Below, one piece after another: positions 21,527 to 35,225 of a DNA stretch of 64,000 bases (positions are counted from its first letter, which is position 1; every line of letters begins with the position of its first letter). The DNA lies in assembly GCA_964234715.1 (NCBI GenBank), contig OZ174281.1. One strand, written 5' to 3'. A model generated the notes under the pieces. It saw only the letters and a program-made list of their open reading frames with translations, ran no database searches and was not told the DNA's origin. A program made the translations under genes and the position numbers. The DNA is from Podarcis melisellensis. Its lineage: Eukaryota.

Positions 21527-21675
21527 CTGTACAGTCTGTATTTTGACTGTAGGTGCATTTGCAGGCAATGATTGTCGTACCATTGAGTTCTTTTGGGATT
21601 GGCTTTGAACTTGAGCAAGTGCTTGTTGGGACAGCAGCATCAGCTGTCCAGTGTTGCTTCTGACAAGAACCGTTC
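21527..21675 (-). CDS. TAF4B: TAF4B exon 2 (GTVLVRSNTGQLMLLSQQ...TVKIQTVQ)
   Basis: TGCAG|GA acceptor, CAG|GTAAAT donor, 149 nt, phase 1 to 0. Matches TAF4/4B GTVLI.SNSG.LMLV. Confidence 0.93.
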
Positions 21676-28119: not shown

Positions 28120-31100
28120 ATCAGAATGATTTGTTTTAAATGTACTAATACTATCAGCATTATGGAAGAGGCATTATTCCCTAGTAGAAGGGGATGATTC
28201 TTCCACGATAATGACTACTATAGCTCATGCTTGCATCTAAAAAAAATTGCTTCAAAAAATAGAGAGTGCATGTGTTAATTAGGTAATTGTCCTAGTCCTC
28301 ACATAAGTCACTTCTAATGCCAAAGCACAGTAAGTAGATTTCATCCTATGCTATCCCTAGAGATGCATGTACAGGTTCTTACTTGTCTGCCACTCTTTGG
28401 ATTATTTTTTTTAAGACACAGAGGGAGACTGCAGATGCATAAATTCATGCTCCAATTTAAACTGTTGTATAAAGCATGACAAAATCTGGAAACCATCAGC
28501 ACAGTTGGGTTATGTAATTGCATTTTGTCTAGAATAAAGGAAATCACTGTGGCAGACAGGCAAAGGTAGAGAGAAGGACAAACAAGCTTTGCCTACGTTT
28601 GTCCATTGAGGCTGAGCATTCAAGGATGTCTCGCTCATGTGGGTTGCAATATCAGCTACTGTTTTTCAAAGCAGTGCAATCTTAGTAAGAAAAACAAAAA
28701 ATATTATGGCTATGTCCAACAGCGATGTGGGACTTTTTGGAAAATTTTGAATTAGATGATGTCTCATCACCCTAAATTGACGGTTTGATGTATCACGCTT
28801 AACTACATTATTTAAAAAGAAGAAAAAAGGAGCTCCGTGTTAATTTAACATGCTGTATAAAAACCTCAACTCTTTCTAGCAGCTCAAAATAGATAAATAG
28901 AAATATTTGATTAAGAACACGTTATGTTTCAATAAAAATAATGAAAGAGAGCTTTGACTGTATTTAAATGCTTGCAAACACTATTCTATAGCAGCCGCTA
29001 ATCCCTGGAACTCCCTTCCATAGGAAAGCCATATGGTACATTGCTTGATTTTTTAGGAGGGCAGTTAATTTTTTTCCTGTTTAGACCAGCTCTTGCATCC
29101 CTCATTATTTGGGGTGCTGTGAATTTCTGTACACATGGGATTTTGTTTCTTCTCCTTCCCTAATGCACCCCCGCAAAAAAAAAAAATCTGCTCTGGAGGG
29201 TCACCCAAACCCTCTAGAGCTGATTTTGAGGGTGTCAATTGCATGTACATTGAGAAGTTCAATTGCATGTACAGAAGTCTGAGTGAGCAGATATGCAGCT
29301 TTTGATACAGCTTCAAAATATTTTAAGATGTTACAATTCACACACTTTAGACTTGAGGGGAAAAATTAAGGTGTCGAAAACTATTAAATACTCATTTTAG
29401 CATGCTAGATACTCAATGCATAAGTAATTGTGTTTTCTTGGGAACAGTCATAAGAAATTATGACTTTGGTTGCACATTTTACTAGCATTATTATTCATTC
29501 TAGCTGCCTAGCTCAGCATGTATTTTTTTCATGCAGGCAATCCCATGAAACAATGAATTTCTAAAACTGAAAACATTATGTACAAAAATATGGTAGTGAT
29601 ATCTTTTCCAGTAAATTCTTCCTATCACTGATGCCTTCAGTAATGCTCAGATGTTGTCAGGGAAGACACACTACAGGTTGCCTTGATGTAACAAGTCATC
29701 CTTAACACAGCTAGCAGCATGGACCAACAGCAACAATTAATACTTGGATAATATGGTAAGGTACATTTTTCAACTTGTTACTTGCTCTGGGCCTGCAGCC
29801 ACTCTGTCAGTCAATGGCACTCATGGCAAGTAATGTTTGTTGTGGCAAAGTTTGTGTGTGACCAACAATAGCCCTGCCACCACTATGCAGGAGTTTTTTC
29901 TGCCACTAGTGTTAAAATGTATATGAAACAAATGAGGAGGAAATAATCTGCAGCTGCTCTGGAGTCTACCAACCTGTGACCTTCCTTCAACAGATACATT
30001 GGCACAGATTCAAAATTAGGGCAGGAAAATCAGTGCATTGCCATGTTTCCTCAAAAAGACAAGCAGCACCATGAGATATAGATAACTACCAACTCCAAGG
30101 TCACCCACACTCAGTTTGAACTGCAGGATCTCCTAGGATGATCACTCCCTTTCATGCATACCAAGGGAGCAATGAATAAGACTGAAACTTATCAATTTGC
30201 TCCTGATTTCATGACATATGTTGTTGGTGACAAGAAGAGCAATGTCTGAACAGGCCCCTGCAGTGGCACTCCTGCCAGGGTTGCTAATTAGATAACTATT
30301 TTCGTATTGTCACATTTGCTACACAGAAATTCTGCCATACCAAAGTCTAACAGCTAATATTTAAGTTTGTTCCAACTCCTAATATTCTCTCATTTTAACA
30401 CCTGCCACCTGCACCTGTCAAGTAATGAAGAAGTCTGGGTAAATGAGAGTAATATCAATTTCTCAAAAAGGTAGAACTTTAATTAGAAAAATATGATACC
30501 AATTCAAAGCTGAAGCTAGCGTCAAATCACATTTTAATAGCACAAGATATCAAAACTTCGACATTAAAAGCTTGGGTGTCAAAACGTTTTGAAAAACTTT
30601 TGCAAGTATATTAGAGAAGGAAACTAAGCCTACCTCAGGCAGGCAAAAAAGTTCATGTCAGTTTATTATATGTGGCACAAGCATAACTTAGATGAGCAAT
30701 TTAGCAACAGTTCAATGGAATCATTTCACGCAAATATGCAGTTGTGGGAACTTTTAAGTCACTGATCTGCAATTAGAAAGTGAAACTAAGGGGATTACAA
30801 TACTAACTTTCTCCCTTTACTTCTACAATAGTCTATGTCACACTTCTAGAACATAAAAACGTTCACTTAATATTGAATCGGAGTGTTTCCATATAAAGAC
30901 TTAATGCTGTGAACCATACAGTACAGATACTGCAGATGGGTTGCTGGAAACTTTGTTTTTAAAAGTCCTATCTGATTTTCCCAAGGAATCTGCATTGAAT
31001 GGGGGGGGGAGGCAGAGATACAGGCTGGCATTTTGGTGCCAACAACATTCAGTGGGCAGGTGCTGAGAAGGGGTGATGAAGGCTACTCCATCCCCACAAT

Positions 31101-31339
31101 AAACACCATTTAACCTGCTCAGCACTCTGCAGAGTTTGAACAGGAGTCCCATGTCGTTGTCCCCACTCCCACCCCGATAGCAGAAATTGAAGCTGGGACC
31201 GTCTGCATGAGAATCAGTTCTTTGCCATGAAGCAATCGTCCCTGCTCTCATGTTTAGAAGGCACATCCCACCACGATGCCCACAACTCGCCACTAGTCCC
31301 CTGATGACTTGACCCGTTAGCTGAAAACAAAACAAAACT

Positions 31340-32370
31340 TGGCGGCGCCTGGCCTCATCCAACAGGAGCGCTGCCAGGAAAGGGAGAAGGCAACTCACCC
31401 GGCGGGATCTGGAAGTTCGCAGGTAGCTGTATCGTCACCGTCTGCGGGGCTTTGGGGGCTCCGGGCTGAGGGGCCGGCAGCCTGGTCCCCGCGCCGGGCG
31501 TCTTGGGGAGCTGCTGAGCCGGAGGCGCCCCTTTGCCCGCCGCGGGAGCGGACGCCGCTCGGGGCTGCTGGGCGACGGGAGGAGGGACTCTGCTGAGGGG
31601 AACTTCGGCGCTCAAGGCGACCGCCGCGGCGGGCGGCGCCGTGCTGTGGGCGCGCAGCGCAGCCGGGGCCTCGCGGAATCCCCCGGTCCCATTCAAGGCG
31701 GCGGCGGTGGTGGCGGGGCCGGCCGCCAAGGCAGCGAGCTCAGGAGACCCGGAGGGCAGGACCCTCCCCGGCGCGGCTGCTCCCGGGGTCGTCATGGAGG
31801 AGAGGGCGCGCGGCGGAAAGTGCGGGAGCCTTGCGGAGACTCCGAGCGAGTCCACAGCATAGCAGCCTCCGAGGGAGCCGGCGAAGCTTCCGCAGCTGAC
31901 GATGCGGCAAAAGCAGCGGCGGCAGAGTCCCCAGCGAAACAAGCTGCCTCAGAGGCTGCACCGCTCGCGGACCAAGCACGAGTTAGGGGCACGGCTGCAG
32001 AAAACACATGGTCACGCAGCCGCTGCCGGCTTCTCCTCCTCAGAGGCGCGCACGTGTAGCGCCAGGCACTTCTCGCCTGGAGCAGAAGGCTCCAGCCAGG
32101 ACAGCGGCGCACGCGAGCCGGCAACGCCCTACGGAGCCCCGCGCCGCCTCCAAGACCCGCCCCGAGGAACAGCCCCCAAGCGGCTCCGCTCTCCGTTAGC
32201 CATGTTTATATAGCCACGCGGGGCTCCCCGGCGCACGCGCCCTGGCTCTCCTGGCGGCTCATTGGCTACACCGGGCAACCTCGGCTGGGCGGCGTCACGC
32301 AGAGAGCACGGCCCCCCGCGCCGCTGAAGAACGCCGGAGGCGGAAAGTTATTGGGGAAATCGAACGCACT
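31340..32370. promoter_or_regulatory. TAF4B CpG island, probable bidirectional promoter
   Basis: Very GC- and CpG-rich. Minus-strand TATATAAA at 32212-32205, CCAAT at 32265-32261, NRF1-like GCGCACGCGC 32231-32240, GGGCGG and CRE half-site near 32287-32297, MYB-like TAACGG near 32193-32198. Confidence 0.85.
31399..31795 (-). CDS. TAF4B: TAF4B coding exon 1 (MTTPGAAAPG...RLPAPQPGAPKAPQTVTIQLPANFQIPPG)
   Basis: ATG at 31795-31793 in a CpG island. C-terminal part matches TAF4B RLPAPQ..TTIQFPANLQLPPG. Donor G|GTGAGT at 31398, phase 1. Confidence 0.88.
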
Positions 32371-32436
32371 TGGTGGTTTTCTCTCTCTTACACCCAAACA
32401 CACTCACTCACCGAAGGCGCACGTTGCATCGAAGAA

Positions 32437-32999
32437 GTAAGTGGAGTTGGTAATGCCAACAGAATGCCTATAATTTAGGGATTTGTCCTTTTAAAATGTT
32501 TGCTTTGGGGTGGTGTTTTCTTTAAATTGATATTACTTGGGGAGTCAGCGCAGTGCTCATCCACAGGCACCCCTGCAGCCTTGTAAATAAGCACCCCGAA
32601 AGTTACTAGCATGCAAAGAGGAAGAAGCTTTTGGAGGAGTGAATAACACAGCAGCGTGCTGTTTTTCCGTAAAGAGTGCAGAGGAAGGAAATGGAGCTCT
32701 AACCTTCCACCACCCACCTGCTCACTTTTCTGCATAAAATTTCCTGCACTGAGCTGCATGCATTTCCTTGTTACTTACGGCTTCCAGGCTAGTGGTTCAA
32801 TACAAGTCTACTGTGTTAGGGCTAACTTTTACCAGTTGAAACTCCCATTAAGCATTTTAGAACATTGCCAATTCTGTGTCTGTGGTTCATGCTGTTCATC
32901 ATCTTAATGCAGACCCAGTGTGTTAGTAATTTAATCCTTAAATATTTCCTACTACTATAATTGGTTAACACAATCTAGCATTTTTCTGCTTATCTGCAG
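32437..32999 (+). other. Putative 5' UTR intron joining the TAF4B CpG island to the MCTS1 retrogene
   Basis: GAA|GTAAGT donor at 32437. Branch-like TTAAC 32965-32969, pyrimidine tract TTTTTCTGCTTATCTGCAG ending at 32999. Confidence 0.5.
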
Positions 33000-33015
33000 C
33001 TGCCAATTCCTAATC

Positions 33016-33831
33016 AACAAGTAGAAATCGTGGCTTGGGCTTGAGAGTGGGAACAGGGCCTGCGTGGGAGCTGCTGCTGCTGCTGCTGCTGTCAGTCGCT
33101 GGCCTTCCAGGCCCTCAGTTCTTGGGGCTCTCGCGGAAACCCCAGCAAGATGTTCAAAAAATTTGATGAAAAGGAGAATGTGTCCAACTGCATCCAGCTA
33201 AAAACGTCAGTTATTAAAGGCATTAAGAACCAGCTGATAGACCAGTTTCCTGGCATCGAACCGTGGCTAAACCAAATTATGCCAAAGAAAGACCCTGTGA
33301 AGATAGTACGTTGTCATGAACATATAGAAATCCTCACAGTAAATGGAGAATTGTTGTTCTTCAGGCAAAGGGAAGGACCATTTTATCCCACGCTCAGATT
33401 ACTTCATAAATATCCATTCATTCTACCACATCAACAAGTTGATAAAGGAGCCATTAAATTTGTACTTAGTGGAGCAAATATCATGTGCCCTGGTCTGACG
33501 TCTCCAGGAGCTAAACTTTATCCTGCTGCTGCTGATACAATCATGGCAATAATGGCCGAAGGAAAGCAACATGCCCTGTGTGTTGGAGTCATGAAGATGT
33601 CGGCAGAGGATATTGAGAAGGTCAACAAAGGAATTGGCATTGAGAATATCCACTATTTAAATGATGGTCTCTGGCATATGAAGACATATAAGTGAAGAAG
33701 CAGGAAGAATCCATTGGATTTCAGCTGGGCCTGTTTTTAATTCTTCTTATAAAATGTGTGGCTAAATGTAAAATTTGTGGTGATGCTAAATAAATCAAAT
33801 GAATGCTGGGGGGGGGGAAACAAGTAGAAAT
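33016..33831 (+). other. Processed-mRNA insertion boundaries: TSD AACAAGTAGAAAT at 33016-33028 and 33819-33831
   Basis: Identical 13-mer on both sides of 5'UTR+CDS+3'UTR. Tail position occupied by G10 (33808-33817). Confidence 0.88.
33150..33695 (+). CDS. MCTS1: Intronless MCTS1 (MCT-1, PUA-domain translation reinitiation/recycling factor) retrogene, intact 181 aa
   Basis: Full-length [26 protein letters not shown]...[11 protein letters not shown] with no introns, stops or frameshifts. A at -3 (AAGATG). AATAAA at 33789-33794. Flanked by a 13-bp direct repeat. Confidence 0.95.
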
Positions 33832-34878
33832 GGCATGTAAATAAAAGTTTGCTTCATCAAACAACTTTAGTAATTCTTCAAAAGAATTGCTGTTATTGTG
33901 TTCAGATGATACTGTATGCTGTTTAATTTATATTCTCCTGCTGAATTGAAATTCAGTATATTGTTTTCCATCTGTCTGAAGTGTTCAAGACTGGTGAATT
34001 CCCTTTCAACAATATGAGTCCCTTGGTCTGAGCTACTCAGGAAAAGCAATTACAATATAATTGTAGGTGTTTTCTCCCCCTCTTCGCTTGTGCAGTGCAC
34101 CTAAATTCTTTTTAATGAGAAAAAAACAAGACATACAAGTTTTATGCAGCTTTGGGACATCATGAACATGTCACAGTTAACTATTCAATTATTGAAAATG
34201 GAATTGGAATCAAGCACCAAATATTGAGAAGTGTAAGTAAACCGTATCATGATCATTTTTTTAGGTTTGTGTAAGAAGCTTGGGTTTTACATGTTGCTTT
34301 GTCCAACAGAAATATAAAGGTTATAAGAAATAGGGACTCTCTTAAAATGCAAGCAATAAGCCAACCTGTAAGTGAATTGACAAATCCAATTTAGTTGCTT
34401 TTGCTGTATGAATTTTTTATAAGACTACCCATGCTCCTTAGAGAGTTTGAAAAATTATGACATCCATTTAATGGTGATTCCTAGGGAATATTCATGCAAC
34501 TATTTTTTTGAAGATACACAGGCTTCATCTGGTCTTCAAGCCCCCCCCCCCCAAATCTATTTCTCCTCCAACCCACACCTCATGGGGCTGCCTTTAAAGA
34601 CAGTTCAGAAGCTTTTGCTGGTACAGAATGCAACAGCCCAGGGATTGGCAAGAGCCAAATTGGGCATGGGGAACCTGTGGCTCTCCAGATCTTTCTGAAC
34701 TGCAGCTCTTGTCATCCGGGTCCATTGGCAATGAGGTCTGGGGCCAATGAGAGTTGGAGTCCAACAACATCTGAAATGCCACGGGTTCCGCATTCTTGGG
34801 CTAAATGGTGCCTGCACTGATAACCTCAAGGCTTGATTACCATAATGTTCTTTGTGTGGGGCTACCCATGTATTTCAG

Positions 34879-35225
34879 AGGGACGCGGGTGGTGCTGTGG
34901 GTTAAACCACAGAGCCTAGGGCTTGCCGATCAGAAGGTTGGTGGTTCAAATCCCCACGACGGGGTGAGCTCCCGTTGCTCAGTCACAGCTCCTGCCAACC
35001 TAGCAGTTCGAAAGCACGTCAAAGTGTAAGTAGATAAATAGGTACCACTCCGGTGGGAAGGTAAACGGCGTTTCTGTGCACTGCTCTGGTTTGCCAGAAG
35101 CAGCTTAGTCATGCTGGCCACATGACCCAGAAGCTGTACACTGGCTCCCTTGGCCAATAAAGCGAGATGAGCGCCACAACCCCAGAGTCGGTCACGACTG
35201 GACCTAACAGTCGGGGTCCCTTTAC
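34879..35225 (+). mobile_element. Sauria SINE inserted into an old L2 fragment, 16-bp TSD
   Basis: TSD CTACCC(A/G)TGTATTTCA at 34862-34877 and 35226-35241. L2 peptide ALITSRLDYHNVLCVGLP continues after the SINE as QKL.LERNAAASLLTG. Confidence 0.88.

What the first reader, a model, noticed from the sequence alone, without database searches (positions are those of the whole stretch)
32200..33149. Retrogene appears to have captured the TAF4B promoter through a new 5' UTR intron
Seen: the retrocopy lies head-to-head with TAF4B, about 650 bp beyond the CpG island. A consensus donor GAA|GTAAGT (32437) and a branch/pyrimidine/CAG acceptor (32965-32999) define a 563-nt intron ending 16 nt before the TSD. 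The spliced leader (about 32300-32436 plus 33000-33149) contains no ATG, whereas the intron contains several. Known: TAF4B is a gonad-enriched TFIID subunit, and retrogenes often gain expression from bidirectional CpG promoters plus UTR introns. Inference: MCTS1-retro may be co-expressed with TAF4B in germ cells.
Basis: partly seen in the sequence, partly recalled or inferred. Interest (0 to 1): 0.85.

Follow-up and report, generated by a model that had tools for sequence, protein, structure and literature searches.

The report
Lizard MCTS1 retrogene borrows TAF4B's promoter
A reverse-transcribed, still-functional copy of the translation factor gene MCTS1 in a wall-lizard-type genome is spliced, across the predicted 563-base intron, to a small new first exon inside the CpG-island promoter of its neighbour TAF4B; this is a confirmed but textbook way for a retrogene to get expressed.

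Summary
An intact, intronless MCTS1 ORF (33150-33695, 178/181 residues identical to human MCTS1) lies between 13-15-nt target-site duplications. It sits head-to-head with exon 1 of a TAF4-family gene read as TAF4B.

Assembled contigs from three probable RNA runs (three studies, a related lizard, "organism A") join about 32436 directly to 33000. That is exactly the predicted GT(32437)...AG(32999) intron. The leader exon (at least 32291-32436) lies inside the TAF4B CpG island. The spliced leader has no ATG; the intron has eight.

An orthologous locus (GCA_947686815.1, Podarcis lilfordi) keeps the donor, acceptor, duplications and an identical protein. All five coding differences are synonymous, so the copy is under purifying selection. 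Snake MCTS1 has six coding exons beside a Cullin gene, and Podarcis muralis has a second, spliced MCTS1, so this is a true retrogene whose parent survives.

Not shown:
- the exact transcription start
- real sharing of regulation with TAF4B
- germ-cell co-expression
- splicing in the window's own species, which is inferred from conserved sites

The mechanism, piggybacking on a bidirectional promoter through a gained 5'-UTR exon and intron, is well documented in mammals. This is a new, well-supported reptile example. The scan has no note of it on other DNA.

The parts
21645..21673 (-). 5' end of TAF4B exon 2 (only the part matched)
   Evidence: The loose end of the X2 contig at 31398 maps here with 1 mismatch. 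That contig therefore skips a 9.7-kb intron, so the run is RNA.
31399..31795 (-). Coding part of TAF4B exon 1 (ATG at 31795, donor G|GTGAGT at about 31398)
   Evidence: ORF. The gene call on the orthologous locus is 865 aa with TAFH and TAF4 Pfam domains. The X2 contig is spliced at 31398.
31300..32450 (.). CpG island shared by the two head-to-head genes
   Evidence: GC 0.64-0.78 and CpG observed/expected 0.74-1.05.
32199..32297 (.). Cluster of promoter-type motifs: YY1-like 32199, TATA-like 32207-32214 (better on the minus strand), NRF1-like 32231, inverted CCAAT 32261-32265, GC box 32287-32292, CRE half-site 32293-32297
   Evidence: Regex scan. One substitution in 99 nt against P. lilfordi. 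Consensus matches only; function is inferred.
32291..32436 (+). Non-coding leader exon 1 of the retrogene (minimum extent; the 5' end is unknown)
   Evidence: Contigs X10 32291-32429, X1 32346-32429 and X2 31812-32429, each running on to the joint. No ATG.
32437..32999 (+). 5'-UTR intron, 563 nt, GT...AG
   Evidence: Skipped in contigs of X1, X2 and X10. Donor and acceptor are identical in L001, where the intron is about 1.1 kb longer. It contains 8 ATGs.
33000..33015 (+). Host-derived first 16 nt of exon 2, upstream of the insertion
   Evidence: Lies between the acceptor and the 5' duplication. Covered by the spliced contigs.
33016..33030 (.). 5' target-site duplication
   Evidence: 13 nt exact in the window. 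15 nt exact in L001; the window has C at 33029.
33031..33149 (+). Retroposed parental 5'UTR, including (CTG)7 at 33071-33091
   Evidence: The part nearest the ATG aligns to snake MCTS1 exon 1. CpG observed/expected is 0.33.
33150..33695 (+). Intact MCTS1 coding sequence, 181 aa, no introns
   Evidence: Pre-PUA and PUA domains. 178/181 identical to human MCTS1 structures. Five parental introns are missing. Only synonymous changes against L001.
33696..33818 (+). Retroposed 3'UTR with AATAAA at 33789-33794, then a G-run plus A's where a poly(A) tail would be
   Evidence: Homology to the snake last exon and 3'UTR runs to 33808. Sequence.
33819..33833 (.). 3' target-site duplication

Best explanation
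An MCTS1 mRNA was reverse-transcribed and inserted about 1.2 kb upstream of TAF4B, pointing away from it. The copy carries no promoter of its own. It is transcribed from the plus-strand side of the TAF4B CpG island as a two-exon mRNA. Exon 1 is a short ATG-free leader ending at 32436. A 563-nt intron (32437-32999) removes the ATG-rich spacer. Exon 2 starts 16 nt before the insertion and carries the old 5'UTR, the full ORF and the old polyadenylation signal. The protein is kept by purifying selection alongside the multi-exon parent gene.

Shown: the retrocopy anatomy, the splice junction, the position of exon 1 in the island, conservation in a second species, and selection on the ORF.

Inferred: that initiation uses the same bidirectional promoter as TAF4B, and that the window's own species splices the same way.
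For: Junction: contigs of X1, X2 and X10 (three studies) join 32429 plus TCGAGGAA to 33000. The 8 letters match window 32430-32436 with one inserted letter and one substitution. All contigs covering 33000-33060 are spliced, and none crosses 32999/33000 unspliced.

The runs are RNA: the same X2 run joins TAF4B exon 1 at 31398 to window 21673, across 9.7 kb. A low-depth intronic contig (32693-32824) shows that organism A still has the intron in its genome.

The GT...AG orientation sets the plus strand.

Exon 1 lies inside the island, with CCAAT, GC-box and other motifs just upstream.

Conservation: donor, acceptor, duplication and protein are identical in GCA_947686815.1. That accession stands in the P. 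lilfordi genome paper.

Selection: 5 synonymous and 0 non-synonymous differences. About 8-9 non-synonymous changes would be expected at the roughly 2% flank divergence over 431 non-synonymous sites.

Retrocopy status: the snake gene has six coding exons over 7-12 kb, and their borders map inside the uninterrupted ORF.

Parent retained: P. muralis UniRef protein P0070 differs at two residues. It also has a 17-residue gap starting exactly at the exon 2/3 border, which requires an intron.

The retroposed 5'UTR is CpG-depleted (0.33 against 0.85-0.91).

The same architecture is documented in mammals (PMC4772013).
Against: The tool labels the runs 'RNA?' as a guess. They come from a related organism, not the window's own; only DNA runs hold most of the stretch.

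Contigs cannot show starts, strand or abundance.

The X2 contig is unbroken from 31812 to the donor. Either plus-strand transcription starts much further upstream, antisense to the TAF4B leader and adding upstream ATGs at 31902, 32008 and 32202, or the assembler merged overlapping divergent transcripts.

The TAF4B start site is unknown, so 'shared promoter' rests on geometry.

No tissue information was available. X1 and X10 show the leader without any TAF4B exon-1 contig.

The CpG comparison uses snake 5'UTRs, not the lacertid parental 5'UTR.
Confidence: 0.8

Rival explanations
1. The leader exon, donor and acceptor predate the retrocopy. They belonged to a divergent non-coding transcript from the TAF4B island, and the MCTS1 cDNA landed 16 nt inside its second exon. 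The intron was inherited, not newly created. This is a variant of the main reading, not its opposite.
For: The acceptor and the 16 nt after it are host DNA outside the duplication. CpG-island promoters commonly fire in both directions (general knowledge; PMC4772013, treats pre-existing bidirectional promoters as the source).
Against: No empty-site outgroup could be obtained, so nothing tests it. No downstream plus-strand exon or domain-bearing ORF was seen beyond the retrocopy.
Confidence: 0.25
2. The plus-strand transcript really starts far upstream, at or before 31812 inside TAF4B exon 1. The retrogene mRNA would then be a long antisense-overlapping transcript rather than a product of a compact bidirectional promoter starting near 32290.
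For: The X2 contig of 803 nt is continuous from 31812 to 32429 and then spliced to 33000.
Against: Contigs are unstranded, and the tool warns that a contig across two genes shows no single transcript. In X10 and X1 the contigs begin at 32291 and 32346 with nothing upstream. Such a leader would carry three upstream ATGs, one opening a 103-codon ORF. X2 also expresses TAF4B, whose 5'UTR must cover part of this stretch.
Confidence: 0.15
3. In the window's own species the retrogene is silent or uses a start within or next to its own 5'UTR. The spliced form would be particular to organism A or a minor isoform.
For: No RNA run of the window's species was available.
Against: Donor and acceptor are canonical and unchanged in the window. 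The ORF has been under purifying selection since the split from P. lilfordi. The retroposed 5'UTR is CpG-poor. Every contig over 33000-33060 in three runs is spliced.
Confidence: 0.07
4. The joint is an assembly chimera or a genomic deletion, not splicing.
For: Only contigs were available, not raw reads.
Against: The same joint appears in three runs from three studies, with exact GT...AG borders. Intronic sequence is still present in organism A. The same run shows the TAF4B exon 1 to exon 2 splice.
Confidence: 0.02

Closest known systems
[quoted passage not shown] 2016, PMC4772013; e.g. HTR7P1 with HEBP1)
   Same: A retrocopy within 2 kb of a protein-coding gene, head-to-head, using its CpG-rich promoter region. 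That paper counts 11 human and 12 mouse cases and reports raised co-expression.
   Different: This case is in a lizard and involves MCTS1 and TAF4B. Co-expression is untested and there are no CAGE data.
Retrogene 5'-UTR introns (Fablet, Bueno, Potrzebowski and Kaessmann 2009, Mol Biol Evol; seen only as a reference in PMC4772013; content from my own knowledge)
   Same: A new untranslated 5' exon plus intron bridges the gap between a distant promoter and an intronless coding copy. The intron lies in host DNA.
   Different: I did not read that paper here. The present case adds junction evidence and conservation across two lizard species.
Mammalian MCTS2, the retrogene of X-linked MCTS1 inside an intron of H13 (PMC1796624, PMC3113556, PMC11790910; abstracts)
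   Same: An independent retroduplication of the same parent gene, also with an intact and active protein.
   Different: MCTS2 sits inside a host-gene intron with its own differentially methylated, imprinted promoter. The lizard copy sits upstream of TAF4B and uses a spliced leader from the neighbour's island. The locations differ, so the two are not orthologous.
The parental MCTS1 locus (snake loci L002-L006)
   Same: Same protein (178/181 identical). The parent also lies head-to-head with another gene, a Cullin, so the retrogene has ended up in a similar divergent arrangement.
   Different: The parent has six coding exons over 7-12 kb and a CpG-rich 5'UTR. The retrogene has one coding exon and a borrowed leader.

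Membership tests
Processed (LINE-mediated) retrogene | Lacks the parent's introns | tested here: met
   The five intron positions of snake MCTS1 fall inside the uninterrupted ORF.
Processed (LINE-mediated) retrogene | Flanked by a target-site duplication | tested here: met
   13 nt exact in the window and 15 nt exact in L001.
Processed (LINE-mediated) retrogene | Poly(A) tail after the parental polyadenylation site | tested here: inconclusive
   AATAAA lies at 33789-33794 and parental homology ends at 33808. Only a G-run plus 2-4 A's follows.
Processed (LINE-mediated) retrogene | A multi-exon parent gene exists elsewhere | tested here: met
   Snakes have a multi-exon gene beside a Cullin gene. 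P. muralis has a second, spliced MCTS1 protein, P0070. The parent locus of the window genome itself was not seen.
Processed (LINE-mediated) retrogene | Functional: intact ORF under purifying selection | tested here: met
   5 synonymous and 0 non-synonymous differences against P. lilfordi, with about 8-9 non-synonymous expected if neutral.
Retrogene piggybacking on a neighbour's bidirectional promoter | Head-to-head with a protein-coding gene, within 2 kb | tested here: met
   TAF4B ATG at 31795 (minus strand). The leader exon starts by 32291 and the retrocopy starts at 33031.
Retrogene piggybacking on a neighbour's bidirectional promoter | Transcript whose 5' exon lies outside the retroposed segment, in the neighbour's promoter island, spliced to the copy | tested here: met
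   The joint (about 32436 to 33000) appears in contigs of three runs, and exon 1 lies inside the CpG island. This was seen in a related species.
Retrogene piggybacking on a neighbour's bidirectional promoter | Divergent transcription starts mapped in one island (CAGE or 5' RACE) | not testable with these tools
   Only contigs were available, and they cannot show starts.
Retrogene piggybacking on a neighbour's bidirectional promoter | Expression correlated with the neighbour | not testable with these tools
   Run metadata are coded and contig depth is not a measure of expression.
MCTS1/TMA20 protein family | Pre-PUA plus PUA domains, full length | tested here: met
   PF17832 at 3.8e-28 and PF01472 at 3.4e-16. 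E = 1.2e-122 to human MCTS1 structures over residues 1-181.
Orthologue of mammalian MCTS2 | Same insertion site (intron of H13) | tested here: not met
   The lizard copy lies upstream of a TAF4-family gene. MCTS2 lies within H13 (papers).
TAF4B, as opposed to TAF4 | TAFH plus TAF4 domains, about 860 aa, TAF4B-type N-terminus | tested here: inconclusive
   The gene call is 865 aa with both domains. Assignment to TAF4B rather than TAF4 rests on length and on an N-terminal motif that I recall from human TAF4B. It was not tested against a reference.

The most novel reading that the evidence does not exclude
The lacertid MCTS1 parent is Z-linked, as its Cullin neighbour and the X-linked mammalian locus would suggest. 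The retrogene would then be an 'out-of-Z' escape wired to the promoter of a germline TFIID subunit, convergent with the mammalian out-of-X MCTS2. It might also feed back on the uORF-bearing TAF4B leader through MCTS1-DENR re-initiation.
Probability: 0.12. Interest if true: 0.7.

Novelty: new member of a known kind. Interest (0 to 1): 0.45.

Why it matters
This is a clean, junction-verified example outside mammals of how a promoterless retrocopy becomes a gene. It takes a leader exon from a neighbour's CpG island and splices out the ATG-laden spacer. MCTS1 has been retroduplicated and kept independently in mammals (MCTS2) and in lacertid lizards, which hints at recurrent selection for a second copy of this re-initiation factor. 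The case also shows that a reader working from sequence alone can predict a splice junction to the base. It does not reveal a new mechanism.

Tried and rejected
1. Looking for lizard parent or orthologous copies through protein clusters. Two cluster-member runs and one homologous-protein search gave mostly mammals, birds, turtles, fish and snakes. The only lacertid entry was P0070 (P. muralis, UniRef only), and it has no contig on record. No outgroup with an empty insertion site and no lacertid parent locus was obtained.

2. An exact-protein look-up of the window ORF found one place only, the P. lilfordi assembly.

3. Earlier scan notes hold nothing on a multi-exon MCTS1 or CUL4B in this genome.

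4. Literature: no paper mentions MCTS1 with lizards, or lacertid Z chromosomes with retrogenes.

5. Pfam on the six longest ORFs downstream (34-64 kb) found nothing, so no host gene is evident on the plus strand.

6. Relative conservation of the leader exon against the intron is uninformative: 2.1% against 1.3% substitutions.

Deliberately not done:
- The MCTS1 coding sequence was not sent to the reads tools.
- Cluster members identical to human MCTS1 (P0002, P0003) were not looked up, and no human contig was fetched.
- Complex prediction and structure prediction were not relevant.

Full report
**What is in the sequence**

Window 33150-33695 (+) is an uninterrupted 181-codon ORF with Pre-PUA and PUA domains. 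It is 178/181 identical to human MCTS1 over its full length.

It is flanked by the direct repeat AACAAGTAGAAAT at 33016-33028 and 33819-33831. AATAAA lies at 33789-33794, followed by a G-run and a few A's where a poly(A) tail would be.

On the minus strand, an ORF starting at 31795 ends at a G|GTGAGT donor at about 31398. It lies in a CpG island spanning about 31300-32450, with GC up to 0.78 and CpG observed/expected 0.74-1.05.

- The donor GAA|GTAAGT has its G at 32437.
- A TTAAC branch-like motif lies at 32965-32969.
- A pyrimidine run ends in CAG at 32997-32999.
- The intron is 563 nt and ends 16 nt before the repeat.

The leader 32291-32436 plus 33000-33149 has no ATG. The intron has eight.

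**It is a retrocopy, and the parent still exists**

A snake MCTS1 protein (P0004, 178/181 identical) is encoded at five snake loci by genes spanning 7-12 kb. In the two loci whose flank reaches the neighbour, that neighbour is a Cullin gene lying head-to-head.

BLAST of the window copy against these loci splits it into the parental exons, with borders at about 33160/61, 33313, 33411/12, 33541-45 and 33615-17. Homology to the 3'UTR runs to 33808. The last 60 nt or so of the window's 5'UTR also align to snake exon 1. The segment between the repeats is therefore a full-length processed MCTS1 mRNA.

A UniRef protein from Podarcis muralis (P0070) differs from the window protein at two residues. It also has a 17-residue gap that starts exactly at the exon 2/3 border and resumes behind an internal pyrimidine-CAG (sequence). 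Producing it needs a real intron, so a spliced parental MCTS1 persists in Podarcis.

**The neighbour**

The exact window protein is on record once, in assembly GCA_947686815.1 (L001). That accession stands in the Podarcis lilfordi genome paper.

L001 is not the window's genome. It is 93.5-97% identical and collinear, apart from an extra 1.1 kb or so inside the intron.

The gene call head-to-head with the MCTS1 ORF there is 865 aa with TAFH and TAF4 domains. I read it as TAF4B from its length and an N-terminal motif that I recall from human TAF4B. That last step was not tested against a reference.

**The decisive test**

I laid public data only on 31000-33149. The coding sequence was left out on purpose because it is likely human-like.

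No holder of the stretch is on record as RNA. The runs flagged as probable RNA hold small shares of it. Four of them were laid. In three runs of "organism A", from three studies, a contig joins 32429, plus the eight letters TCGAGGAA, to 33000.

The eight letters are the counterpart of window 32430-32436 (CGAAGAA), with one extra T and one A-to-G change. The junction is therefore the predicted 32436^33000, to the base on the acceptor side and by homology on the donor side.

Every contig covering 33000-33060 is spliced in this way. None crosses the acceptor unspliced.

Three observations show that these runs are RNA and that the joint is splicing:
- In the same X2 run another contig joins TAF4B exon 1 at 31398 to sequence that maps to window 21645-21673. 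It skips 9.7 kb.
- A low-depth contig lies inside the intron (32693-32824), so organism A still has the intron in its genome.
- The skipped segment has GT...AG on the plus strand only, which also sets the strand.

**Where the leader starts**

The contigs begin at 32291 (X10) and 32346 (X1). The X2 contig is unbroken from 31812 to the donor.

Contigs cannot show starts and are unstranded. X2 also expresses TAF4B, so its long contig may be the TAF4B 5'UTR merged with the retrogene leader, or it may be a long plus-strand transcript.

In either case the 5' exon lies inside the TAF4B island and outside the retroposed segment. Just upstream lie the following motifs:
- an inverted CCAAT box at 32261-32265
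- a GC box at 32287-32292
- a CRE half-site
- an NRF1-like motif
- a YY1-like motif
- a TATA-like motif whose better match is on the minus strand (32207-32214)

These are consensus matches, not evidence of function.

The retroposed 5'UTR has CpG observed/expected 0.33 at 65% GC. The snake parental 5'UTRs have 0.85-0.91. This fits a copy that lost promoter status, but it is an indirect argument because the lacertid parent was not seen.

**Conservation and selection**

In L001 the donor context, the acceptor context, the 16 host-derived nucleotides and both repeat copies are identical to the window. The only exception is window position 33029. The original duplication therefore appears to be 15 nt, AACAAGTAGAAATGG.

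The intron is about 1.1 kb longer in L001. Loose ends in organisms A and B match that extra piece, so the window lineage carries the shorter form.

The two ORFs differ at five positions, all third-codon and synonymous. At the roughly 2% substitution level of the flanks, about 8-9 changes would be expected over the 431 non-synonymous sites if the copy were drifting. None is seen, so the copy is a functional gene.

**How it most likely works**

The cDNA landed downstream of the plus-strand side of a CpG-island promoter that already served TAF4B.

Plus-strand transcripts from the island run into the copy. A GTAAGT donor at the island's edge and a pyrimidine-CAG acceptor 16 nt before the insertion remove a spacer that holds eight ATGs. 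This leaves an ATG-free leader of about 300 nt in front of the MCTS1 start codon (A at position -3).

Termination uses the retroposed AATAAA.

- Shown: the anatomy, the junction, its conservation, and selection on the ORF.
- Inferred: initiation from the same promoter as TAF4B, the same splicing in the window's species, and any tissue pattern.

**Comparison with what is known**

Carelli et al. (PMC4772013) describe this exact category: retrocopies within 2 kb head-to-head with a protein-coding gene, 11 in human and 12 in mouse, with raised co-expression. Their reference list cites the 2009 study of retrogene introns (Fablet et al.), which I did not read here.

Mammalian MCTS2 is an independent retrogene of the same parent. 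It sits in an H13 intron with its own imprinted promoter (abstracts), so it is neither orthologous nor built the same way.

No paper in the library links MCTS1 to lizards. I therefore class this as a new member of a known kind.

**Limits**

- There is no RNA from the window's own species, and there are no raw reads, tissue labels or outgroup with an empty site.
- The germ-cell co-expression idea and the "out-of-Z" idea in a neighbouring note (s1-498184) remain untested.

Noticed in passing
window 32826-32829 / L001:1562-2686: The 5'-UTR intron is about 1.1 kb longer in P. lilfordi. Loose ends of contigs from organisms A and B match the extra piece, so the window lineage has the shorter form (a deletion, or a lineage without the insertion). 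The nature of the extra DNA was not determined.
   Followed up: partly
window 33071-33091: (CTG)7 in the retroposed 5'UTR. The P. lilfordi copy is 6 nt shorter there. The reads tool skipped 33061-33149 as repeat-like.
   Followed up: partly
window 33809-33818: A run of about ten G's followed by A's stands where the poly(A) tail should be (GGTGGGGAAAA in P. lilfordi). The origin of the G-run is unexplained.
   Followed up: no
window 32199-32214: A YY1-like GCCATGTT motif lies next to a TATA-like TTTATATAG (TATATAAA on the minus strand) in the middle of the CpG island. It is 100% conserved in P. lilfordi. It could position the TAF4B start about 30 nt to its left.
   Followed up: no
window about 31923 and 31873: The GC-rich TAF4B 5' region varies in length between species. 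P. lilfordi has a 27-nt (GCG/GGC)n expansion and an 8-nt insertion. Organism A shares the 8-nt insertion.
   Followed up: no
window 33352-33365: An internal pyrimidine-CAG inside MCTS1 exon 3 appears to be used as an alternative acceptor by the P. muralis parental gene (protein P0070, 17 residues shorter).
   Followed up: partly
window 34884-34990: A sequence with the look of a tRNA-derived SINE (GGTTCAAATCCCCAC box-B-like motif) lies about 1 kb downstream of the retrocopy.
   Followed up: no
L002 and L006 (snake loci): The parental MCTS1 is itself head-to-head with a Cullin gene. An unannotated 316-aa minus-strand gene follows its 3' end in all five snakes.
   Followed up: no
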